Below, in pieces: positions 5,533 through 15,840 of a stretch of DNA of 15,840 bases (position 1 is the stretch's first letter; each line of letters opens with the position of its first letter). The notes under the pieces are model-generated. The model was given only the letters and a program-made list of their open reading frames with translations. It made no database searches and was not told the DNA's origin. The stretch covers positions 1-15,840 of the IMG/VR virus record IMGVR_UViG_3300033892_000023. One strand, 5' to 3'. The position numbers and the translations under genes are program-made.

Positions 5533-6348
5533 ATGAGCGTAAACTTATGTCATTATGAAGCGGAAAATATAAGTTATAAAGACTTACAAAATTTACAAGG
5601 AATGATATATTATGAAATTAAGTATGATGGAACTCATGTATGTCTGAAATATGAAAATGAATTAAAGATTAATACTAGAAAAGATATACCGCATGATAAA
5701 GGATTTCAAGAACTTTTTTTAAAAGTTCCAAATATTGAGGAAGTTATAAATTATATAAAGAAAAATAATCAATATATTATTCATGGAGAACTTGTACATA
5801 AAAAGACATCAGCATTACAAATCCATACAAATGAAATTCCGGAATTTATCATATATGATGTCTTTGACAAAGAGAACAATAGATATTTAAGTCCGCTTGA
5901 AGTTGATAGCGAAATTTATTATTGGTATCCTGAAATTTGTTTAGATTTAGATGACATAGTTCACGATATAACTAAAGAAAGACTTGAAGGATTAGTAGCT
6001 AAAATTTATAATCCAAAATTTACAAATTGTAAAGAAGGACAAAATTTCAATTTATGTCTTTACAAATACAAACCTTACTTTTCTGTACTTGGAGTAATAT
6101 TTAAACCAATTAGAAGAGAAATTGATGTTAGACAATTATCATTTTTATTAGGAGAAATAGATAATGATTTAAAGAATAATAAAGATGAATGGTATAGAAA
6201 TCATCAAGATCTTTACAAGTTCTTACTTTCAAATAAAGATAAAATAATACAGATACTACAAAACGAAAACTTCATATTACAAATTGAGAAAGAAACACAT
6301 TTAAACATTAAGAAAATTAAAGAATACATTATGAACTTCAAAAGATGA
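5533..6348 (+). CDS. ATP-dependent ligase-family nucleotidyltransferase, probable RNA ligase, 271 aa
   Basis: Ligase NTase motifs in order: I YEIKYDGTH (K30), Ia NTRK, III IHGELV, IIIa FIIYDVF, IV LEGLVAK, V LYKYKP. A ~90 aa helical-looking C-terminus follows rather than an obvious OB fold. Confidence 0.8.
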   Translation: MSVNLCHYEAENISYKDLQNLQGMIYYEIKYDGTHVCLKYENELKINTRKDIPHDKGFQELFLKVPNIEEVINYIKKNNQYIIHGELVHKKTSALQIHTNEIPEFIIYDVFDKENNRYLSPLEVDSEIYYWYPEICLDLDDIVHDITKERLEGLVAKIYNPKFTNCKEGQNFNLCLYKYKPYFSVLGVIFKPIRREIDVRQLSFLLGEIDNDLKNNKDEWYRNHQDLYKFLLSNKDKIIQILQNENFILQIEKETHLNIKKIKEYIMNFKR

Positions 6349-6429: not shown

Positions 6430-8130
6430 ATGAGTTTGCCATATAAAGTACGTTTTAAATTGCCACTTGAGTTTCTGACACTGCAAGACTGGAATAACTT
6501 TGTGCAAAATTTATTATTTATTAATCAATATGGTCCTGCTAAACTTCTCCAGTATTATCAAAATGGCAATTTTCAGAATCTGGATGAAGTTATTGCAAAA
6601 TATTTATATGTTTCAGCGTTAAAAGCTAAAGGTTATAATGTTCTTCATAATTTATCACAACCTCAAGCTTATACATTTGGTGAAGGAAATCAACAGCCAT
6701 TTAAAAGCATGGCAAATAAGCCAATAATTCAACTGAAGTCTGTAATATTTCCAATTCTAAATTTTCAGATACAATTATCTAAAGTTAGTAAACAATTACA
6801 ATTATTAATTCCTAAAGTAATTTCTAAAATTGTAACTCCAAATCAAATTGCTGGAACACAATTTACATTTTCAGGAACTTCAAATGTACAAACATTAATA
6901 GAAGATTATTTAGATCCATCATATTTACAAACTTGGAGAGAAATAATAATACAAAATCTAGGCAGTTCTGTAGTTCAAATTAATAATTCTATCTATCTAA
7001 TGCCTAAAAATTGTTTAAAGATAACTGTAAGTTCACCAAGTGAAATTCAATTAACCGCACAAACTCCAACTTTGCTAAGTGAAGAAATTGAATTTGTTGG
7101 AATTCCTATAACATTTTATACAATTACAATAACAAATTCACAGAGTGATCCAACTCCTTCACCATTTCAACAATTGTTAAATTTGAATTTATCATCTATA
7201 TTATCTAGCTCGTCTCAACTTTTAAATTTACAATTTTGCTTAGATGTTAATTGCAATACTCCATTATATGCATGGATTGAAAGTTTCAATTCTAATTTAT
7301 CAAGTGTTTATATTTGGATTAATTTGCCAACTTCAATTCCGGCTAATTCATCAATTACAATTTATATGTTTGTTAGAAATTCAATTCAGTATCCTTATAC
7401 TGGAATGAGACCAGATTTATCCGCGAGTTATGCACAATATGATAATGGAAAAAATATATTTTTAATTTATTTTAATGGTAATGAACCATTATCTAATTTT
7501 AATAATCAAGGAAATTCATTAACTCAAATATCTACAACTGGGCCGTTAGGAAATACAATAAATGCAATTTATATAAGTGGTTATAATTCACATTTTGGAT
7601 TTGTATATACTGCAAAATCTATACCAAATCAAGCAGTAATTGCAGAATCATCAGTGATAGATCTAGGAAATCAAACAGGCGGATTAAATGCAGATAATGG
7701 ATTTTCTTCTATAGTTGATAGTACTTCAATTGGTAATTTAAACGCAATAAGTGTGGATATGGGGTATTCTGGTTCTTATTTTTCTAATGATTACTTTATA
7801 AGTGGAACTCAAACTTCTGATTTAAACCCAGCAGGAACTGCAGTATCACAGTGGCTTTATGCATGGGTCGTATATTCTGGAACATCAAGTACTTCATGGT
7901 ATGGATGTATAGCACCACAACTTTATAGTTCTTCAGGCGGTTATTGTGGTACAGTTGGCAATAATCCATTTTCTAGTTCTTCTCAACTATATTTAGGTAT
8001 AATTGGTAGTGTAAATTCTAGTTATCAGTGGCAAACTGCATGGAATTTTATGAGATTAAGAGCTTATCCTCCAAACGGTACAATGCCTTCAAATTCTCAA
8101 CCGCAAAAAACAATAATTCTAGTAAGTTGA
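6430..8130 (+). CDS. Virion structural protein (SIRV ORF564-like) with a C-terminal DUF2341/lectin-like beta domain, 566 aa
   Basis: Synteny and size. The DUF2341-like segment reads ITITNSQ..PTPSPFQQLL...LYAWIE...IWINLP.SIPANSSITIY...YDNGKNIF, and the C-terminus is S/T/N/G-rich. Confidence 0.8.
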   Translation: MSLPYKVRFKLPLEFLTLQDWNNFVQNLLFINQYGPAKLLQYYQNGNFQNLDEVIAKYLYVSALKAKGYNVLHNLSQPQAYTFGEGNQQPFKSMANKPIIQLKSVIFPILNFQIQLSKVSKQLQLLIPKVISKIVTPNQIAGTQFTFSGTSNVQTLIEDYLDPSYLQTWREIIIQNLGSSVVQINNSIYLMPKNCLKITVSSPSEIQLTAQTPTLLSEEIEFVGIPITFYTITITNSQSDPTPSPFQQLLNLNLSSILSSSSQLLNLQFCLDVNCNTPLYAWIESFNSNLSSVYIWINLPTSIPANSSITIYMFVRNSIQYPYTGMRPDLSASYAQYDNGKNIFLIYFNGNEPLSNFNNQGNSLTQISTTGPLGNTINAIYISGYNSHFGFVYTAKSIPNQAVIAESSVIDLGNQTGGLNADNGFSSIVDSTSIGNLNAISVDMGYSGSYFSNDYFISGTQTSDLNPAGTAVSQWLYAWVVYSGTSSTSWYGCIAPQLYSSSGGYCGTVGNNPFSSSSQLYLGIIGSVNSSYQWQTAWNFMRLRAYPPNGTMPSNSQPQKTIILVS

Positions 8131-8137
8131 TGTAAAA

Positions 8138-9673
8138 ATGTCTTCAACTTACTGCGTTCAATTACCAGAAAATCTTTTATTATTGTCTATGACTACTGTA
8201 AATCCTGTAAATTTTACATCTTTACAATTTTCATTATCTGTAAATTCATTAGTTATTTTTCTATTTTCAAAATATCCATTTAATTCTGGTTATTACAATA
8301 ATTTTTGTATAAATCAAGATGAATTTGGATTTGCACAAGTTGGACAAACTTTCAATATAGATCTATCAAATTATCAAGGATATTATATGCTAATGTTAAT
8401 TTATCCACAAGGAATTAATTTAAAGAGTTCTAAAAGTTGTGTCTCGATTCAAGGTTTAACTATGACTTTTCAGAATACAACAATTTCACCAATTACAAGT
8501 GAAACTGTAATTAACAATTTTGATGGTCAAGAAGAAACCGGATTTTGTACATGTTATGATGGTCAAAGTCATGTAATAGAAATTCTATGTAATAATTCAA
8601 ATTATGTTTCTGCTATTTTATTAAATAATTTAAATAATCAATTACTAATAATGACTTGTCAAGGATTTGTATATGAAAATAATACAACTGTAGGATTTAT
8701 AACGCCAAGTACATGTGGTACTTTTGGTTCATATTTAACAGCAGAAATAACATTTATTGCAAATCAATCAGTTATAGATTTTCTAAATAATAATAATATC
8801 TCTTATAATATTTTATCATCTACTGAATGTCAACCAACTTATAAATTATTACCATGTACTTTACCATGTAAATCGTTTTACCAAATTACAAAATTATTAT
8901 CTCCACCAACTAAATATTCTATAATATCTTCAAAATTATGGAATGAAATTGTACAAGACCTATATCTAACTTATAGTGTATTTAAATATATTAATTATTT
9001 AACACAATATGCATATTTAGACTATATATATCCTACAATTTTAGACTTTTATAATTTCTATGAGAACTTTCAACCATATCCATTTACTCAATTATTGTAT
9101 GCACAAAAAGGAATTCCATTAACTGTAAACGATTTTAACAAATTAATAGATGCAATTGTAAAATTAGCAAATGAAAATGATATAAAATTGAAAAAAGGAC
9201 TTTCTTATGTTCAGCGTGATCAAGTCGTAAGAGCTTCACAATTTGCAAATATAGTTTATAATGTTAATCAATTTCTAACTTTTAATTATAATCAATATTT
9301 TCTATTAGATTGTAATGGATCAATTTTCTCGAATTTATTGAATAAACAAAATACATTTTTAAATGTCATAATTAATAATTTAGTAGCTTCACTTAATATT
9401 CCTTCAAACGTTTATATTAAAAACTTATTAATATATACTTCAAATCAAACTATTTATAATTATGGTGTAATAAATAAATTAATAATTAATATTAATAACG
9501 GCGAAATTTATCTTAATGGAAATTCATTTATAAATTTTCTACTTATAACTGACAATAATAACAATATTTATGTAAATGATAATTCAGTAATAAACAATTT
9601 AATTTGTATTAGCAATACTGGAACTATAAATATCTCACCAAATGCAATAATTAAAAATAATCAATGTGCTTAA
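8138..9673 (+). CDS. Conserved rudiviral protein (SIRV1 ORF510-like), probable virion or adhesion protein with an Asn-rich C-terminal beta-solenoid, 511 aa
   Basis: Starts 7 nt after the ORF566 stop (operon). Cys-containing N-terminal domain and C-terminal repeats such as INKLIININNGEIYLNGNSF / INFLLITDNNNNIYVNDNSV / INNLICISNTGTINISPNAI. Confidence 0.7.
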   Translation: MSSTYCVQLPENLLLLSMTTVNPVNFTSLQFSLSVNSLVIFLFSKYPFNSGYYNNFCINQDEFGFAQVGQTFNIDLSNYQGYYMLMLIYPQGINLKSSKSCVSIQGLTMTFQNTTISPITSETVINNFDGQEETGFCTCYDGQSHVIEILCNNSNYVSAILLNNLNNQLLIMTCQGFVYENNTTVGFITPSTCGTFGSYLTAEITFIANQSVIDFLNNNNISYNILSSTECQPTYKLLPCTLPCKSFYQITKLLSPPTKYSIISSKLWNEIVQDLYLTYSVFKYINYLTQYAYLDYIYPTILDFYNFYENFQPYPFTQLLYAQKGIPLTVNDFNKLIDAIVKLANENDIKLKKGLSYVQRDQVVRASQFANIVYNVNQFLTFNYNQYFLLDCNGSIFSNLLNKQNTFLNVIINNLVASLNIPSNVYIKNLLIYTSNQTIYNYGVINKLIININNGEIYLNGNSFINFLLITDNNNNIYVNDNSVINNLICISNTGTINISPNAIIKNNQCA

Positions 9674-12021: not shown

Positions 12022-13104
12022 ATGAGTGGTGAGACTAAATTGTCAAATATAATTTATTACGTTTATCCACAACATCATGACGTTAGTTTCAAATTTGTAG
12101 CTAAAGAACATATAAAAATGTTAAAAGAAAAATATACAGTTTATGAAATTCCAACTTTATCATTCTATCAATTTACCCCATTCAGAAATCCAATTTCTAT
12201 AATCCATCCATTTTTTTACAGTATGTGGCATTGGGGAAAAGTAGAATTTTCATTCTTTGAACAATATAGATCTAAAGTTAGTGCAATTGTTGGAGTTGAA
12301 GTAGCTGACAGTGATAGAATTTCAGAAAAATTCATAGATTATGCTAATAATTACGCTGATAGACTAATTGGAAATTCTGAATGGACATTAAACGCTTTTA
12401 AAAATTCTGGACTAAAAATTCCAATTTATAAAGTTGTACATAATTTTAATGAGAGATTATTGGCAAAAGATAATGAGTTAAAAATTGATGAACAAGTTAA
12501 ATATATTGAAAAAGTTAAAAATGAGAAGAAAATAAAACTAATCTTCATTTCCCTTTGGCATTCTGATTTTAGGAAAGGGGCCGATTTATTTCATGTTATA
12601 GCAAAGGAATTACAAAAAGAAAGAGATGATATCTATTTCCTAGTAAAATCAGGCGGGCCTAGAACAGATTTTCAAGATTTGAAAATGTTTAATCTCACGG
12701 GAAATACAGACTTTGATAATATAGTTAAAATGTATAGAATATCAGATTTGTATTTATTAACTAGTAGAGGCGGTAGTTTTGAATTAAATGGACTAGAGGC
12801 ATTTATATCTAAAATTCCAACAATTGCCACAAAAGGCGGGGCATGGGAAGAATATTTTCCTAACACTTTGAAAGATTTACTAGTAGATTCTTGTAGATTT
12901 CCAGACGTTTTATGGAATAATCCAATTCATATTGGTCAAGGAGTAGAAATGTGCATGGATAAAGCAGTAGAAAAAATATTAGAAGTTTTAGATAAATTAG
13001 ATGAATATAAGGCAAAAATTGAAGAAAACTATAACTTTTGGTTAGAAAACTTTAGTTATGAAACTGTAAAAAAACAATTATTTAACGCTTTGACTTTTAC
13101 TTAA
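12022..13104 (+). CDS. Glycosyltransferase, GT-B fold (GT4-like; SIRV ORF356-like), 360 aa
   Basis: NSEWT, RKGADL, DLYLLTSRGGSFELNGLEAF and PTIATKGG motifs. 1 nt gap after the upstream GT. A TTG at 12040 behind an SD-like GGTGA is an alternative start. Confidence 0.88.
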   Translation: MSGETKLSNIIYYVYPQHHDVSFKFVAKEHIKMLKEKYTVYEIPTLSFYQFTPFRNPISIIHPFFYSMWHWGKVEFSFFEQYRSKVSAIVGVEVADSDRISEKFIDYANNYADRLIGNSEWTLNAFKNSGLKIPIYKVVHNFNERLLAKDNELKIDEQVKYIEKVKNEKKIKLIFISLWHSDFRKGADLFHVIAKELQKERDDIYFLVKSGGPRTDFQDLKMFNLTGNTDFDNIVKMYRISDLYLLTSRGGSFELNGLEAFISKIPTIATKGGAWEEYFPNTLKDLLVDSCRFPDVLWNNPIHIGQGVEMCMDKAVEKILEVLDKLDEYKAKIEENYNFWLENFSYETVKKQLFNALTFT

Positions 13105-13455
13105 AAAATCATAAATTTTTAGTAATGCTTCAATATTTTCTTCTCTCTTTAACTTTTTTATCTCTCTTATTATTTCATCATAAATATTATTAATTTTAAT
13201 CAATTCCAAAACTTCTTTAATTAGCAGAATTGAAAACCTATGAGATTGTTGAACTATAACATAAATTTTTCTTGCTAATTTTTCAGCATCAAATTTGTCA
13301 TATTCAATTGAAAGTTCAACATCTGAATATTTTGCGGTAACATTATTTTCATAAAGAGTCAAAAAAAGTTTATATTTGTCTTCTACAATTACTTCAGCTT
13401 GATTATCATTTATCTTAACTATCACGTTTTCTCTTAACTTAAACTCCTTAGTCAT
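13078..13455 (-). CDS. Hypothetical protein, ~125 aa (MTKEFKLRENV...), beta-rich N-terminus and helical C-terminus
   Basis: The ATG at 13455 lies 23 nt after the G of a minus-strand ATAAATGTCATAAAA motif (G at 13478). It overlaps the GT stop convergently. Confidence 0.7.
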   Translation of the reverse strand: MTKEFKLRENVIVKINDNQAEVIVEDKYKLFLTLYENNVTAKYSDVELSIEYDKFDAEKLARKIYVIVQQSHRFSILLIKEVLELIKINNIYDEIIREIKKLKREENIEALLKIYDFLSKSQSVK

Positions 13456-13469
13456 CAATATAATATATA

Positions 13470-13525
13470 TTTTATGACATTTATATTTCTTTAAATTTCG
13501 AGTAAATCTTAAATTGGTCATAAAA
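13470..13525. promoter_or_regulatory. Divergent GTCATAAAA promoters for ORF125 (minus) and the transporter-TGT operon (plus)
   Basis: TTTTATGAC (13470-13478) and GTCATAAAA (13517-13525), each preceded by a TATA-like T/ATAAAT on its own strand. Confidence 0.62.
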
Positions 13526-13538
13526 TCGGTTCAATAAT

Positions 13539-14729
13539 ATGGAATTTAAAAGAGAAAGTTCCGGAATAATTAAAAGCTTTAATGTCCTAGATATTTTTTC
13601 CATAAATCTTTTGTATATGGGAATCTTAAGTGGAATAAGTTATCCACTTTTTGTCTCTGAAATGATGAAAAATGTAAACTTATTATTTGCTATTTTAATA
13701 GCATCAGTCTTTGGAATTCCACTTTTAGTAATGTATTATTTACTGACTAAGAAAATTCCGCTTAATGGAGGAGATTATGCTTATATTCGCTCAACATTTT
13801 CTCCAAAGTTTTACACAATTTTCGGAATTTCATTATGGTTAATTTACGTATTTTCAGCTCCAGTATTATCTGACTTAGTACTTCTAAATTTCAATATTCC
13901 GATATTCGAGAAATTCTTAATTTCAGAATTATTATTTGCTATTGCTTTACTTAGCATAGTTAAAAAGTCAATTTATGCATATATTGTAGACGGAATTGCA
14001 ATTTTACAAATAATTGTTTCTTTAATTCTGCCAATTTCAAGTTTCCATTTTCAAGCCCCAAATTTCATATTATCAAACACTTTACTTTCAGCTTTACTAT
14101 TTGATTTAGCCATGTTTTTGTTTCTAAATGCAATTAGCTACATAGCTGGAGAGACAAAAAATGTAAATAAAAGCATGAAAATTGGTTATTTTGGAAGTTA
14201 TTTAGTTGTTACTGTATTAGCAATATTAGACAGTTATTCAAATTTAAATATATTATTTCTGTTAATGCCGATATGGTTTATGAGTTATATTTTTGTAACC
14301 TCATTAATTCAAAGTAGATTAGTTCAAAATTTAGCATTTGATAAAATCTTACCTGAAAAATTTGCAAAAATAACGCCTAACGTTTTGTTATTAATCTTTA
14401 TTGCTGATACAATTGCAAATATCTTAGAAAATCTACTAAACTTTTCAATTTCATTTGGATTTGACGGTCTATTATTCATCTTCTGGAACTTTATAATTGT
14501 TAGTTTTGCATTTCTAAAATTAACAAACAAAAAACTATTATTTTCAATAGTAATGATTAGCTTAATTTTACAGATCTTCTTATTCTTTTATTTAGGATTA
14601 CAAAATTCAGTATTCTATAACTTTGTAATTGAAGGAAATCTCCTATACGCAATATTGAGAATTGCAATAATGCCAATTGTAGGAGGAATTATTTACTTGT
14701 TAAGGAGAAAAATTATAAACGCTGAATAA
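13539..14729 (+). CDS. APC-superfamily (amino-acid permease-like) transporter, multi-pass membrane protein, 396 aa
   Basis: N-terminal FKRESSGIIK typical of Sulfolobales permeases, APC motifs IPLNGGDYAYI and YIAGETKN, and about 11 hydrophobic segments. Confidence 0.85.
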   Translation: MEFKRESSGIIKSFNVLDIFSINLLYMGILSGISYPLFVSEMMKNVNLLFAILIASVFGIPLLVMYYLLTKKIPLNGGDYAYIRSTFSPKFYTIFGISLWLIYVFSAPVLSDLVLLNFNIPIFEKFLISELLFAIALLSIVKKSIYAYIVDGIAILQIIVSLILPISSFHFQAPNFILSNTLLSALLFDLAMFLFLNAISYIAGETKNVNKSMKIGYFGSYLVVTVLAILDSYSNLNILFLLMPIWFMSYIFVTSLIQSRLVQNLAFDKILPEKFAKITPNVLLLIFIADTIANILENLLNFSISFGFDGLLFIFWNFIIVSFAFLKLTNKKLLFSIVMISLILQIFLFFYLGLQNSVFYNFVIEGNLLYAILRIAIMPIVGGIIYLLRRKIINAE

Positions 14730-14731
14730 AG

Positions 14732-15667
14732 ATGAAATTGATATTTGGCATTTCTAGTTCAAGAAGTTATTTTTTTAAAACTAATTTTCCAGTCTTAATT
14801 AATCAGTTGAGATTTAGAAAAAAAACATGGAAAAATGAAACATGGATTGATAGTGGCGGATTTCAAATTATAATGCATAACTTAAAAATTTCTGTAAATG
14901 ATGTCTTGCAAAAGTATAAAAGTGTTAATGCTTACGCATTTTTTTCTCTCGATATTCCTAGCGTTTTTGCACCTCTTGACAAACGGAATTTTGAATATTT
15001 TGAGTATCTCTACACAAAAATTGAATGGATAGAAAAAATTATACCAGTTTTACATATTTATCCACTTCAAGATTTGGATAAAGCTATTGATTTTTACAAA
15101 CAATACAGTTATTATTTTGCAATTGGTGGAATAATGACTTCTAGCAAATTAAGAGTTTTACAATATACATTTCCGTGGATTTATTATATAAAAAGAAAAG
15201 TATCTTATCTTCACGTTCTCGGTATATCATCTCCATATTTTTTACAAATTTTTGATAATATGCAAAGCATGGATACCGCATTTTGTTCAATAATTTCAGC
15301 ATTTAAAGAAATAATTTGGTTTAATGGATCTAGGAGATATGTTGGAAATATGAAAACAAAAAGGGAAAGATATAAAATTACAAAAGAAGAAAAAGAACAA
15401 TTGTTTGAATTTTTAGATAAACATAACTTTCCATTTGAATATGATTTAAACAACAGAAAAATTTTAGAAATGATAAATGTATACATGTTACTGTATAATA
15501 ATTGGAGAATTAAGAATAAGTATACAGAATATGCTGATAAATTAAGAAAAATGGGACTAGATAGTTTGACAAGTGAGTTAATTAGAAATTATAAAATTGC
15601 TAGTGAAATATTGAAAGAGAAAAAGAATAAAAAGAAAAAAGAAGATGAATTAGAAACAGAGATATAA
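14732..15667 (+). CDS. TGT-fold guanine transglycosylase (tRNA-guanine transglycosylase or DpdA-like), 311 aa
   Basis: Motifs IDSGGFQ (D40), SLDIP (D74), IPVLH, AIGG, LHVLG and SMDT (D181). There is no CxCxxC Zn site and no PUA domain. It starts 2 nt after the transporter stop. Confidence 0.85.
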   Translation: MKLIFGISSSRSYFFKTNFPVLINQLRFRKKTWKNETWIDSGGFQIIMHNLKISVNDVLQKYKSVNAYAFFSLDIPSVFAPLDKRNFEYFEYLYTKIEWIEKIIPVLHIYPLQDLDKAIDFYKQYSYYFAIGGIMTSSKLRVLQYTFPWIYYIKRKVSYLHVLGISSPYFLQIFDNMQSMDTAFCSIISAFKEIIWFNGSRRYVGNMKTKRERYKITKEEKEQLFEFLDKHNFPFEYDLNNRKILEMINVYMLLYNNWRIKNKYTEYADKLRKMGLDSLTSELIRNYKIASEILKEKKNKKKKEDELETEI

Positions 15668-15684
15668 AAATTCACATTTTCATA

Positions 15685-15840
15685 TCATTCTTCTTCTTCA
15701 TCAACATCATCATCATCAACATCATCATAACCAAAAACAATATTGATAGCTTCCTCTATTTTATCTTTAAATTTTGTTTTTATTTCGTCTGGACTTAATA
15801 ATTGGTGAACTTCATTACTTAAAATCTTTGAAACTGTATC
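15685..15840 (-). CDS. C-terminal 51 aa of a hypothetical protein with an acidic tail (partial, enters from the window end)
   Basis: Hand translation gives DTVSKILSNEVHQLLSPDEIKTKFKDKIEEAINIVFGYDDVDDDDVDEEEE*, with the stop at 15687-15685. Confidence 0.65.
   Translation of the reverse strand, partial: DTVSKILSNEVHQLLSPDEIKTKFKDKIEEAINIVFGYDDVDDDDVDEEEE
15698..15727. repeat. Tandem 15 bp duplication TCATCAACATCATCA x2 in the acidic tail
   Basis: Exact copies at 15698-15712 and 15713-15727. Confidence 0.7.

What the first reader, a model, noticed from the sequence alone, without database searches (positions are those of the whole stretch)
13539..15667. APC transporter and DpdA-like transglycosylase form a two-gene operon: possible 7-deazaguanine uptake and genome-modification system
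Seen: one promoter (13510-13525) and a 2 nt gap between the transporter and TGT genes. The TGT keeps the catalytic and substrate Asp motifs (DSGGFQ, LDIP, SMDT) but lacks the CxCxxC Zn site and the PUA/tRNA-binding domains, and has PVLH/AIGG/HVLG motifs plus a basic C-terminus. Established: viral DpdA paralogues of TGT exchange G in DNA for preQ0-type bases to resist restriction, archaea make preQ0 for archaeosine, and salvage transporters (YhhQ, ECF) cluster with tgt genes in bacteria. Inference: the enzyme acts on viral DNA rather than tRNA, and the shortened permease supplies a deazaguanine precursor or an amine/amino-acid co-substrate. That would give a function to two rudiviral genes usually annotated separately.
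Basis: partly seen in the sequence, partly recalled or inferred. Interest (0 to 1): 0.72.

Follow-up and report, generated by a model that had tools for sequence, protein, structure and literature searches.

The report
Rudivirus permease plus DpdA-like gene pair
This is the known, dispensable two-gene cassette of Sulfolobus rod-shaped viruses: a very diverged amino-acid-type membrane permease followed by a stripped-down guanine-exchange enzyme already listed in the literature as a likely DNA-modifying DpdA. Nothing beyond their adjacency ties the permease to that chemistry.

Summary
The sequence observation holds. Two plus-strand ORFs (13539-14729, 396 aa; 14732-15667, 311 aa) lie 2 nt apart, between a divergent and a convergent gene, behind a conserved TATA-like block.

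The window is a metagenomic SIRV-type usarudivirus (92% to SIRV9/10). The pair corresponds to SIRV2 gp14-gp13.

Gene 2 is a catalytic-domain-only, zinc-less TGT-fold protein. It keeps the three catalytic Asp, and a His where bacterial DpdA has His181. It sits in a monophyletic rudiviral clade, sister to the STSV2 homologue, whose virus carries dCDG in its DNA. Hutinet et al. 2019 already list the SIRV and SRV proteins as DpdA. No rudiviral DNA has been analysed.

Gene 1 is a 12-segment, highly diverged APC-superfamily permease (hhalign 98%). It lacks the TM1 G-[ST]-G motif.

The deazaguanine-uptake idea rests on adjacency in SIRVs only:
- The genes are convergent in SRV and 4.7 kb apart in SBRV1.
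- The permease is alone in ARV2/SSRV1, and the TGT-like gene is alone in STSV and in archaeal MAGs, often beside an ArcS-core gene.
- S. islandicus makes preQ0 itself.
- One analogy favours the idea: phage phiLM21 pairs DpdA with a YhhQ transporter.

SIRV2 lost gp10-gp14 in culture without a fitness cost.

Verdict: ordinary, a new member of a known kind, with a cheap decisive test available.

The parts
13505..13525 (+). Conserved upstream block with a TATA-like TTAAAT about 30 nt before the permease ATG. It is the candidate archaeal promoter of a leaderless or short-leader bicistronic mRNA.
   Evidence: the block is invariant in nine US SIRV-type sequences although the upstream flanks fall into three unalignable groups. 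SIRV1-3 have TTTATTTATGTC at the same distance. No transcription start data; function is inferred.
13539..14729 (+). Gene 1: a 396-aa, 12-segment, highly diverged APC-superfamily permease (orthologue of SIRV2 gp14/ORF399). Substrate unknown.
   Evidence: PHROG 8289, E 6e-200. Pfam AA_permease_2 scores only 21 bits against a cutoff of 27. The family profile matches GkApcT 6f34 at E 9e-9 and also CAT4, AdiC, xCT and LAT2. hhalign against cellular APC permeases gives 98.1%, E 8e-14, across TM2-TM8. There are 12 hydropathy peaks and dN/dS is 0.10-0.17. The TM1 G-[ST]-G motif is replaced by S-Y-P with invariant Y35.
14732..15667 (+). Gene 2: a 311-aa, zinc-less, catalytic-domain-only TGT-fold guanine-exchange enzyme (orthologue of SIRV2 gp13/ORF310). 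It is DpdA-like and DNA is the probable target.
   Evidence: PHROG 887, E 6e-68. AF2 model pLDDT 80. Foldseek top hits are all TGTs, probability 1.0, TM about 0.5. The deep profile matches arcTGT 1iq8 at 8e-40, DpdA 7ui4 at 6e-18 and bacterial TGT at 1e-17. D40, D74 and D181 are invariant in 62 relatives and H108 is kept in 61 of 62. It falls in the monophyletic rudiviral clade.
15668..15684 (.). A 17-nt spacer between the TGT-like stop and the stop of a convergent minus-strand ORF. It contains a T4 run at 15677-15680 and marks the end of the unit.
   Evidence: the minus-strand frame is open from 15840 down to a TGA at 15685-15687. Termination at the T run is inferred.
13078..13521 (-). Divergent upstream ORF (PHROG 21700, function unknown) that bounds the unit on the left. 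Its real start is probably internal.
   Evidence: The PHROG profile aligns only from residue 15, there is an internal Met at residue 23, and the first 'ATG' lies inside the conserved promoter block, which persists in SIRV4/5/11 where this upstream sequence is replaced.

Best explanation
The locus is the SIRV gp14-gp13 accessory cassette. The two genes are most likely co-transcribed from a TATA-like promoter about 30 nt upstream of the permease ATG. Translation of the second gene is probably coupled to the first, or started from a weak Shine-Dalgarno-like GCTGA.

Gene 2 is a stand-alone TGT-fold transglycosylase. It would use D181 as nucleophile, D40 as general acid/base, and D74 plus H108 to read the base. 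It most likely exchanges a fraction of the guanines in viral DNA for a 7-deazaguanine base (preQ0-type) taken from the host's own archaeosine pathway. The likely role is protection from host nucleases.

Gene 1 is a very diverged 12-TM APC-superfamily permease. It most likely moves an amino acid, amine or other organic cation during infection. On present evidence it is a neighbour of the DpdA-like gene, not a demonstrated partner.

Shown here or in the cited papers: gene structure, conservation, fold, active-site residues, phylogeny, distribution, and dispensability in culture.

Inferred: co-transcription, DNA as the substrate, which base is inserted, and the permease substrate.
For: Structure of the unit.

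Both genes functional: dN/dS about 0.1-0.27.

TGT fold and active site. The residue roles follow Gedara et al. 2023 (PMC10164549).

DNA rather than tRNA:
- There are no tRNA-binding domains, and the host has its own arcTGT.
- The sister protein is STSV2 gp15 (tree 100/99), and STSV2 DNA contains dCDG (PMC10516641).
- The next relatives sit beside ArcS-core genes in HerA/NurA or DNA-methylase, mobile-element contexts.
- The proteins are listed as DpdA by Hutinet 2019.

Accessory role: SIRV2 lost gp10-gp14 spontaneously in CRISPR-null hosts, and the mutants propagate like wild type (PMC6315595).

Permease is APC.

Permease independent of the TGT-like gene: it is alone in ARV2/SSRV1, and the TGT-like gene is alone in STSV and MAGs.
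Against: - No rudiviral DNA has been analysed for modified bases, so DNA modification remains an inference.
- The protein hits no curated TGT, DpdA or DUF6610 model directly, even at E<=10.
- It lacks the Zn site that arcTGT, bacterial TGT and bacterial DpdA all keep, so activity itself is unproven.
- Bacterial DpdA needs the DpdB ATPase, and no such partner is known here.
- The tight SIRV linkage, the joint loss in SIRV2, and the DpdA+YhhQ precedent leave room for a real functional link to the permease.
- The loss of the TM1 G-[ST]-G motif argues that the substrate may not be an ordinary alpha-amino acid.
Confidence: 0.5

Rival explanations
1. The permease imports a 7-deazaguanine base (preQ0, CDG or a related salvage product) or another co-substrate for the DpdA-like enzyme. 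The two genes then form a self-contained uptake-and-insertion module, a non-orthologous counterpart of phage DpdA+YhhQ pairs.
For: - The two genes are tightly linked and co-directional in every SIRV-type genome and contig, with a 2-nt gap or an ATGA overlap.
- They are still adjacent in SRV.
- They were lost together in SIRV2 lab stocks.
- All four rudiviral genera with the TGT-like gene also have the permease.
- Phage phiLM21 has DpdA (PF23859) overlapping a Vut_1/YhhQ gene by 1 nt. Two other DpdA-only phages list YhhQ under the next accession number.
- The canonical amino-acid carboxylate-binding G-[ST]-G of TM1 is replaced by S-Y-P with an invariant Tyr, so the substrate may be unusual.
Against: - No known 7-deazaguanine transporter is an APC protein. 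The permease shows only APC similarity.
- In SRV the genes are convergent, and in SBRV1 they are 4.7 kb apart on opposite strands.
- ARV2/SSRV1 keep the permease with no TGT-like ORF at HMM E<=10.
- STSV1/2 and all six archaeal relatives examined have the TGT-like gene without a permease, and three of those six have an ArcS-core gene nearby.
- The host makes preQ0 itself. STSV2, whose host reportedly lacks the pathway, is the virus that has no permease.
- The SIRV and Icelandic arrangements are syntenic, so they count as one evolutionary event.
Confidence: 0.15
2. The TGT-like enzyme acts on RNA (host or viral tRNA, or another RNA) rather than DNA. It would retune translation during infection, as the database name 'queuine tRNA-ribosyltransferase' implies.
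For: - The wider family scores best against the archaeal tRNA enzyme model: TIGR00432 matches 53 of 62 members (best 2e-40), and arcTGT 1iq8 scores 8e-40 against 6e-18 for DpdA.
- Bacterial TGT works on tRNA with a catalytic domain alone.
- No DNA modification has been shown for any rudivirus.
Against: - The host already has arcTGT.
- The protein lacks the C-terminal domains arcTGT uses to hold tRNA, and the Zn subdomain of bacterial TGT.
- It has His at the position where all solved tRNA TGTs have Gln and bacterial DpdA has His181.
- The exhaustive profile search reached only 311 clusters, and 61 of the 62 sampled carry this His. True tRNA TGTs were therefore not reached.
- The sister protein belongs to a virus with dCDG in its DNA.
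- Neighbourhoods of relatives are DNA-modification or defence-like.
Confidence: 0.17
3. The permease-like protein no longer transports anything. It would serve as a membrane factor, for example in superinfection exclusion or in remodelling the membrane before pyramid-mediated egress. It is simply co-expressed with an unrelated enzyme.
For: - It is extremely diverged from cellular APC proteins, at about 25% identity and E about 1e-7.
- The TM1 substrate motif is lost.
- It falls below the Pfam gathering score.
- It is dispensable in culture.
Against: - It is under strong purifying selection, with dN/dS about 0.1.
- All 12 hydrophobic segments are kept, as is the APC hallmark GE-x-KN-x-x-K after TM6 and other conserved polar or charged residues (E205, K211, R260, D268, E297, N298).
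- These features are what a working carrier would keep.
Confidence: 0.1

Closest known systems
DpdA, the DNA-guanine transglycosylases (bacterial Dpd system, e.g. S. Montevideo DpdA, PDB 7ui4; phage DpdA1 of 9g, CAjan and phiLM21)
   Same: Both have a TGT-type TIM-barrel catalytic domain without tRNA-binding domains. The three catalytic or base-binding Asp are kept, along with the Phe four residues after the first Asp. H108 aligns with bacterial DpdA His181. Both are carried by a virus as the only deazaguanine gene, like the large 'DpdA-only' phage group. The rudiviral proteins are already tabulated as DpdA by Hutinet et al. 2019.
   Different: The window protein does not hit NCBIfam DpdA, PADLOC DpdA or Pfam PF23859, and none of the 62 relatives hits PF23859. 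hhalign against phiLM21 DpdA gives only 5% probability. The CxCxxC...H zinc site present in 7ui4 is absent. There is no DpdB-type ATPase partner. No modified base has been shown in rudiviral DNA.
arcTGT (TgtA, archaeosine tRNA-guanine transglycosylase, PDB 1iq8/1j2b), catalytic domain
   Same: It is the best structural and profile match. D40, D74 and D181 align with D95, D130 and D249. Both come from the archaeal lineage and both would use a preQ0-type substrate.
   Different: The window protein is 311 aa against about 580 aa. It lacks the C1, C2 and PUA domains and the Zn site. It has His instead of Gln169 at the base-recognition position. The host keeps its own arcTGT.
STSV1/STSV2 gp15-type 'DpdA' with an adjacent ArcS-core (DUF5591) gene, and the same pair in Conexivisphaera and Desulfurococcales MAGs
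   Same: These are the closest relatives by tree (100/99) and share the zinc-less architecture. STSV2 DNA carries dCDG at 0.04% of G.
   Different: Rudiviruses have no ArcS-core gene next to the enzyme, and SIRVs have a permease upstream instead. Identity is only about 37% to STSV and about 30% to the MAG proteins.
APC superfamily amino acid/polyamine/organocation transporters (GkApcT and SLC7 CATs, AdiC, LAT)
   Same: There are profile and profile-profile matches across TM2-TM8. The protein has 12 hydrophobic segments and keeps the GE-x-KN-x-x-K motif after TM6.
   Different: Identity to any cellular member is about 25%. The Pfam score is below the gathering cutoff. The protein is about 60-70 residues shorter, with short loops. 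The TM1 G-[ST]-G motif is replaced by S-Y-P. No subfamily can be assigned: the weak best NCBIfam hits are ethanolamine permease, FrlA and a generic amino acid transporter.
Phage DpdA + YhhQ (Vut_1, preQ0 transporter) two-gene modules, e.g. Sinorhizobium phage phiLM21 gp25-gp26
   Same: Both are a transglycosylase and a membrane transporter packed tightly in a virus that has no deazaguanine synthesis genes.
   Different: The transporter family is unrelated (YhhQ/COG1738 against APC), and so is the DpdA subfamily. The gene order is reversed. YhhQ has a demonstrated preQ0 role, and the rudiviral permease has none.

Membership tests
TGT superfamily (tRNA/DNA-guanine transglycosylase fold) | TIM-barrel catalytic fold like solved TGTs | tested here: met
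   AF2 model pLDDT 80, pTM 0.79. The Foldseek PDB top 50 are all arcTGT, bacterial TGT or QTRT1, with E 8e-6 to 2e-4, probability 1.0 and TM about 0.5.
TGT superfamily (tRNA/DNA-guanine transglycosylase fold) | Three active-site aspartates (general acid/base, base recognition, nucleophile) | tested here: met
   D40, D74 and D181 are invariant in 62 relatives. They align with arcTGT D95, D130 and D249 and with the DpdA aspartates (roles).
TGT superfamily (tRNA/DNA-guanine transglycosylase fold) | Direct match to a curated family model (Pfam PF01702, TIGR00432/00449/00430) | tested here: not met
   The window protein has no hit at E<=0.01, or even at E<=10. The link is transitive only: 44 of 62 relatives hit PF01702 and 53 of 62 hit TIGR00432.
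TGT superfamily (tRNA/DNA-guanine transglycosylase fold) | Structural zinc site CxCxxC...H | tested here: not met
   The protein has one Cys. The motif region reads FLDKHNFPFE, and the His ligand position is I248. The site is absent from 37 of 62 relatives, including the whole 30-member clade.
arcTGT (TgtA) | C-terminal C1/C2/PUA tRNA-binding domains | tested here: not met
   The protein is 311 aa and aligns only to residues 55-349 of the 582-aa 1iq8 chain.
arcTGT (TgtA) | Gln at the base-recognition position (Gln169) | tested here: not met
   H108 occupies this column. It is His in 61 of 62 relatives.
DpdA (DNA-guanine transglycosylase) | Active-site set Asp95/Phe99/Asp130/His181/Asp256 of S. 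Montevideo DpdA | tested here: met
   D40, F44, D74, H108 and D181 align with these residues in the HMM alignment to 7ui4, whose chain numbering is offset by +20. Caveat: phage phiLM21 DpdA appears to have Gln at the His position in a low-confidence alignment, so the His is suggestive, not diagnostic.
DpdA (DNA-guanine transglycosylase) | Match to curated DpdA models (Pfam PF23859, NCBIfam NF041059, PADLOC DpdA) | tested here: not met
   The window protein has no hit. Of the 62 relatives, 0 hit PF23859, 23 hit NF041059 and 26 hit PADLOC DpdA. phiLM21 DpdA hits PF23859 at 2e-43.
DpdA (DNA-guanine transglycosylase) | Inserts a 7-deazaguanine into DNA; modified nucleoside present in the genome | not testable with these tools
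   This needs LC-MS/MS of virion DNA or an enzyme assay. The only indirect support is dCDG in STSV2 DNA, whose DpdA is the sister clade.
DpdA (DNA-guanine transglycosylase) | Genomic association with deazaguanine synthesis or tailoring genes (Que genes, ArcS, DpdB/C) | tested here: not met
   None is present in the window or listed for any SIRV or SRV. The association is met in relatives: an ArcS-core gene lies next to the STSV2, Conexivisphaera and Desulfurococcales homologues.
APC superfamily permease | Profile-level homology to APC transporters over the core helices | tested here: met
   The profile matches GkApcT at E 9e-9 plus CAT4, AdiC, xCT and LAT2. hhalign gives 98.1%, E 8e-14, over 236 columns.
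APC superfamily permease | Pfam AA_permease_2 at gathering threshold | tested here: not met
   The score is 21.2 bits against a cutoff of 27. A few close relatives carry a precomputed PF13520 hit.
APC superfamily permease | 12 transmembrane helices in the 5+5 inverted-repeat (LeuT) fold | tested here: inconclusive
   There are 12 hydropathy peaks. The AF2 model failed (pLDDT 39), so the fold itself was not verified.
APC superfamily permease | TM1 G-[ST]-G substrate-carboxylate motif | tested here: not met
   S34-Y35-P36 aligns with GkApcT G-T-G. Y35 is invariant across rudiviral permeases. TM1 falls outside the hhalign match.
Known 7-deazaguanine/queuine transporters (YhhQ/Vut_1, ECF QueT/QrtT) | Sequence membership in one of these families | tested here: not met
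   Pfam, NCBIfam and PHROG scans give only APC-type hits. As a positive control, phiLM21 gp26 hits Vut_1 at 5e-14.
Known 7-deazaguanine/queuine transporters (YhhQ/Vut_1, ECF QueT/QrtT) | Transport of preQ0, preQ1 or queuine | not testable with these tools
   This needs an uptake or complementation assay.

The most novel reading that the evidence does not exclude
The rudiviral permease founds a new, APC-derived family of 7-deazapurine base importers (preQ0, CDG or G+ base). It would have replaced YhhQ in a viral 'transporter + DpdA' module. SIRVs would then scavenge deazaguanines from the hot-spring environment or from lysed neighbours to modify their DNA independently of the host pathway. The enzyme would be a zinc-less archaeal DpdA lineage distinct from DpdA1-4.
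Probability: 0.13. Interest if true: 0.7.

Novelty: new member of a known kind. Interest (0 to 1): 0.35.

Why it matters
If the DpdA-like enzyme really modifies rudiviral DNA, 7-deazaguanine DNA modification would extend to the best-studied crenarchaeal model viruses (SIRV2). It would also help explain how these viruses cope with Sulfolobus restriction and possibly CRISPR systems.

The materials for a clean test already exist: wild-type SIRV2 and a spontaneous gp10-gp14 deletion mutant.

The zinc-less clade is not captured by any curated model, so current pipelines either miss it or call it a tRNA enzyme. In cellular genomes it is paired with ArcS-core genes inside HerA/NurA-type islands.

The permease idea would matter only if an uptake assay were positive. 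As it stands it is a guilt-by-association guess, with about as much evidence against it as for it.

Tried and rejected
- Single-sequence and shallow-profile searches of PDB with the TGT-like protein found nothing. Only the 62-sequence profile reached TGT and DpdA structures.
- The single-sequence PDB search with the permease gave only a chance hit.
- The AF2 model of the permease from eight sequences failed (pLDDT 39). It was not used for fold search.
- The genome-contig scan for cellular permease relatives returned only SIRV-like contigs inside two actinomycete assemblies. The word-index searches found no close cellular homologue of either protein.
- I tested whether the 207-aa ORF that follows the permease in ARV2/SSRV1 is a hidden TGT. 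It is not (hhalign 1.3%, no relevant Pfam hit).
- I tested whether ARV2 gp18 or ARV1 ORF318 are hidden TGT-like genes. No HMM hit appeared at E<=10.
- From memory I expected a TGT gene in ARV1 and a preQ0 operon in SRV. Neither is there.
- Literature searches linking rudiviruses with transglycosylase, deazaguanine or amino acid transporter returned nothing in the held library. The guessed PMC id for the SIRV1/2 transcript-map paper (Kessler 2004) returned nothing, so no published transcript data for gp13-gp14 were seen.
- The pair does not show the strong early anti-defence promoter consensus (TTTAWATA plus BRE) described for SIRV2 terminal genes, and that paper does not mention these genes.
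- The sigma-70 promoter/terminator scanner was not used because the host is an archaeon.
Full report
**What the window is**

The window is the 15,840-nt metagenomic contig IMGVR_UViG_3300033892_000023. It is a *Sulfolobus islandicus* rod-shaped virus of the North American type. The region 13000-15840 is 92% identical to SIRV10 and SIRV9 and 82-89% identical to other usarudiviruses. RefSeq already annotates the two genes in those genomes as 'aminoacid permease' and 'queuine tRNA-ribosyltransferase'. In SIRV2 they are gp14 (ORF399) and gp13 (ORF310).

**The observation**

- The ORFs are at exactly the stated coordinates, 13539-14729 and 14732-15667, both on the plus strand, 2 nt apart.
The 311-aa protein has one cysteine and no room for extra domains.
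- Against eight relatives, dN/dS is 0.10-0.17 for the permease and 0.09-0.27 for the second gene. Both are therefore maintained by selection.
- The unit is bounded on the left by a divergent ORF. On the right it is bounded by a convergent ORF whose stop lies 17 nt after the TGT-like stop.
- Upstream, a 19-20-nt block (TCTTAAATTGGTCATAAAA) is invariant in nine US SIRV-type sequences, although the flanks beyond it fall into three unalignable groups.
- That block puts a TATA-like TTAAAT about 30 nt before the ATG. This is the spacing expected for a leaderless Sulfolobus mRNA (established knowledge; no transcription start data were available).
- At the junction, relatives have either the same 2-nt gap or an ATGA stop/start overlap. 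SIRV1-3 have an 8-nt spacer by the SIRV2 annotation, about 10 nt in the junction alignment.
- In all SIRV-type loci fetched the two genes are adjacent and co-directional.
- Co-transcription is thus well supported by structure, but it has not been demonstrated.

**The second gene**

- It matches no curated TGT, DpdA or DUF6610 model, even at E<=10.
- It matches no solved structure by sequence, either alone or as a 10-sequence profile.
- An AlphaFold model (pLDDT 80) finds only TGT-family structures (arcTGT, Z. mobilis TGT, human QTRT1) at probability 1.0 and TM about 0.5.
- An exhaustive HMMER search of 1.84 billion representatives found just 311 related clusters.
- Among 62 sampled relatives, 44 match Pfam TGT, 53 match the arcTGT model, 23-26 match DpdA models, and none matches Pfam PF23859, the phage-type DpdA.
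- The 62-sequence profile hits arcTGT 1iq8 at 8e-40, S. Montevideo DpdA 7ui4 at 6e-18 and bacterial TGT at about 1e-17.
- In those alignments D40, D74 and D181 fall on arcTGT D95, D130 and D249 and on the DpdA catalytic aspartates. All three are invariant in the 62 sequences.
- H108 falls on DpdA His181, which Gedara et al. assign to base recognition. arcTGT, T. maritima TGT and QTRT1 have Gln at that position. 61 of 62 relatives have His.
- This His is suggestive rather than diagnostic. Phage phiLM21 DpdA seems to have Gln there in a low-confidence alignment.
- The CxCxxC...H zinc site is missing in the window protein and in 37 of 62 relatives.

**Phylogeny and neighbours of the second gene**

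- In a maximum-likelihood tree the rudiviral proteins (window, SIRV2, SBRV1, SRV) form one clade (100/97).
- That clade is sister to the STSV protein (100/99), then to a Conexivisphaera MAG protein, then to other thermophile MAG proteins.
- All of these lie inside a 30-member zinc-less clade (99/97).
- STSV2 has an ArcS-core (DUF5591) gene right after its homologue, beside thymidylate synthase and a DNA methyltransferase. Its DNA contains dCDG at 0.04% of G (PMC10516641).
- In the Conexivisphaera and Desulfurococcales MAGs a DUF5591 gene sits 2-15 nt upstream of the TGT-like gene. Next to them are a HerA-like ATPase, a protein of about 1,450 aa and, in one case, NurA.
- A Pyrobaculum relative lies with a C5 DNA methylase and PaRep2 genes.
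- None of the six neighbourhoods examined has a permease.
- These contexts, the missing tRNA-binding parts and the host's own arcTGT make DNA the more likely substrate.

**What was already known**

- Hutinet et al. 2019 list SIRV1, 2, 4, 5, 7-11, SIRV3 and SRV under DpdA, with no other pathway gene and no YhhQ.
- They note that for such DpdA-only viruses the modification status is hard to predict, and that the base could come from the host or from uptake.
- Their Supplementary Table 2 lists FolE, QueD, QueE, Gat-QueC and arcTGT in S. islandicus.
- Mayo-Muñoz et al. 2018 found that SIRV2 had spontaneously lost gp10-gp14 during passage in CRISPR-null hosts. All the derived deletion mutants except the last (gp37) deletion propagate like wild type.
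- The pair is therefore accessory, as an anti-defence or environmental-fitness function would be.

**The permease**

- The single sequence falls below the Pfam AA_permease_2 cutoff (21 against 27 bits).
- A six-sequence rudiviral profile hits GkApcT (9e-9), CAT4, AdiC, xCT and LAT2.
- A profile-profile comparison with its nearest cellular relatives gives 98.1% probability, E 8e-14, over TM2-TM8.
- Those nearest relatives are bacterial CAT-type APC permeases at about 25% identity.
- Twelve hydrophobic segments remain, so 'shortened' means trimmed loops.
- The APC hallmark GE-x-KN-x-x-K after TM6 is kept.
- The TM1 G-[ST]-G motif that holds the substrate carboxylate is replaced by S-Y-P with an invariant Tyr.
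- No subfamily can be assigned, and the structure prediction failed.
- The protein shows no similarity to YhhQ or ECF-type queuosine-precursor transporters.

**Is the permease tied to the enzyme?**

For:
- The genes are tightly linked in all SIRVs, adjacent in SRV, and were lost together in SIRV2.
- All four rudiviral genera with the enzyme also have the permease.
- There is a genuine precedent. Sinorhizobium phage phiLM21 has DpdA (PF23859, 2e-43) overlapping a Vut_1/YhhQ gene (5e-14) by 1 nt. Two other DpdA-only phages list YhhQ under consecutive accession numbers.

Against:
- The SIRV1-3 and US SIRV arrangements are the same syntenic block, so they count as one event.
- In SRV the genes are convergent with overlapping 3' ends, so they cannot share a transcript.
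- In SBRV1 they are 4.7 kb apart on opposite strands.
- ARV2 and SSRV1 have the permease but no TGT-like ORF, even at HMM E<=10 for ARV2. ARV1 has neither gene.
- STSV1/2 and all the cellular relatives examined have the enzyme without the permease.
- The host makes preQ0 itself. STSV2, whose host reportedly lacks the pathway, is the virus without a permease.
- Both genes give roughly congruent relationships within Rudiviridae, so shared ancestry alone can explain their co-occurrence.

**Conclusion**

The operon and the 'DpdA-like, probably DNA' reading are the best-supported view, but the DpdA listing is already in the literature. The window is one more member of a known gene pair.

The proposed role of the permease is an untested association. 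I put it at about 0.13-0.15.

What is mildly new here:
- The rudiviral enzyme belongs to a zinc-less archaeal clade that no curated model captures.
- Its cellular relatives sit with ArcS-core genes in defence-island-like clusters.
- A decisive experiment needs only existing SIRV2 stocks.

Noticed in passing
L054:7379-8987, L060:6447-7882 (with flanks to 16 kb): In Desulfurococcales and Conexivisphaera MAGs, an ArcS-core (DUF5591) gene and a zinc-less TGT-like gene form a tight pair. Beside them are a HerA/DUF87 ATPase, a protein of about 1,430-1,460 aa with no Pfam hit, NurA, and DUF1156/DUF499 methylase-type genes. This looks like an archaeal analogue of the bacterial Dpd deazaguanine restriction-modification island.
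   Followed up: partly
L005 (Streptomyces gamaensis NZ_JBHSPB010000050.1), L006 (Planomonospora alba NZ_BAAAUT010000071.1, 31.9-kb contig): SIRV1-3-like contigs carrying both genes (70% and 66% identity to the window proteins) sit inside two actinomycete genome assemblies. One cluster is even named 'MULTISPECIES ... [Bacteria]'. This is almost certainly contamination of the assemblies with rudiviral DNA.
   Followed up: no
L004:11621-12430 (SBRV1 ORF23-270): SBRV1 carries a PAPS-reductase/PP-loop ATPase gene (PF01507, 3e-15) about 2 kb from its TGT-like gene. A MAG relative (L061) has a PP-loop ATPase (PF01171) directly upstream of its TGT-like gene. QueC-type chemistry is PP-loop based, so these could be tailoring enzymes.
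   Followed up: no
window 13539-15667 against L016, L021 and others: The two genes diverge unevenly between contigs. For example, the permease is 87% identical and the TGT-like gene 75% in L016, and 82% and 67% in L021, while both are about 93% in SIRV10. This suggests recombination breakpoints near the gene junction or faster evolution of the enzyme.
   Followed up: no
window 13078-13521 (-): The mechanical start of the divergent 147-aa ORF lies inside the conserved promoter block of the permease gene. The PHROG profile aligns only from residue 15, and there is an internal Met at residue 23, so the real gene is probably shorter and the intergenic region about 80 nt.
   Followed up: partly
L002/L028 (SRV 7486-9607): Mayo-Muñoz et al. 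2018 state that gp13-gp14 are absent from ARV and SRV. SRV in fact has both (ORF419 permease and ORF294 TGT-like), arranged convergently with overlapping 3' ends.
   Followed up: yes
window 5533-6348 (+): A 271-aa ORF matches the Pfam RNA_ligase (2e-9) and ATP-dependent DNA ligase adenylation (1.5e-6) domains. Its PHROG family is labelled 'unknown function'. It may be a rudiviral nucleic-acid ligase that is under-annotated.
   Followed up: no
L027:7262-7885 and L003:6001-6624 (ARV2 gp33 / SSRV1 ORF28-207): In hoswirudiviruses the permease is flanked by a viral TFB-like gene upstream and a conserved 207-aa ORF of unknown function 10 nt downstream. That ORF takes the position the TGT-like gene has in SIRVs, but it is not TGT-like.
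   Followed up: partly
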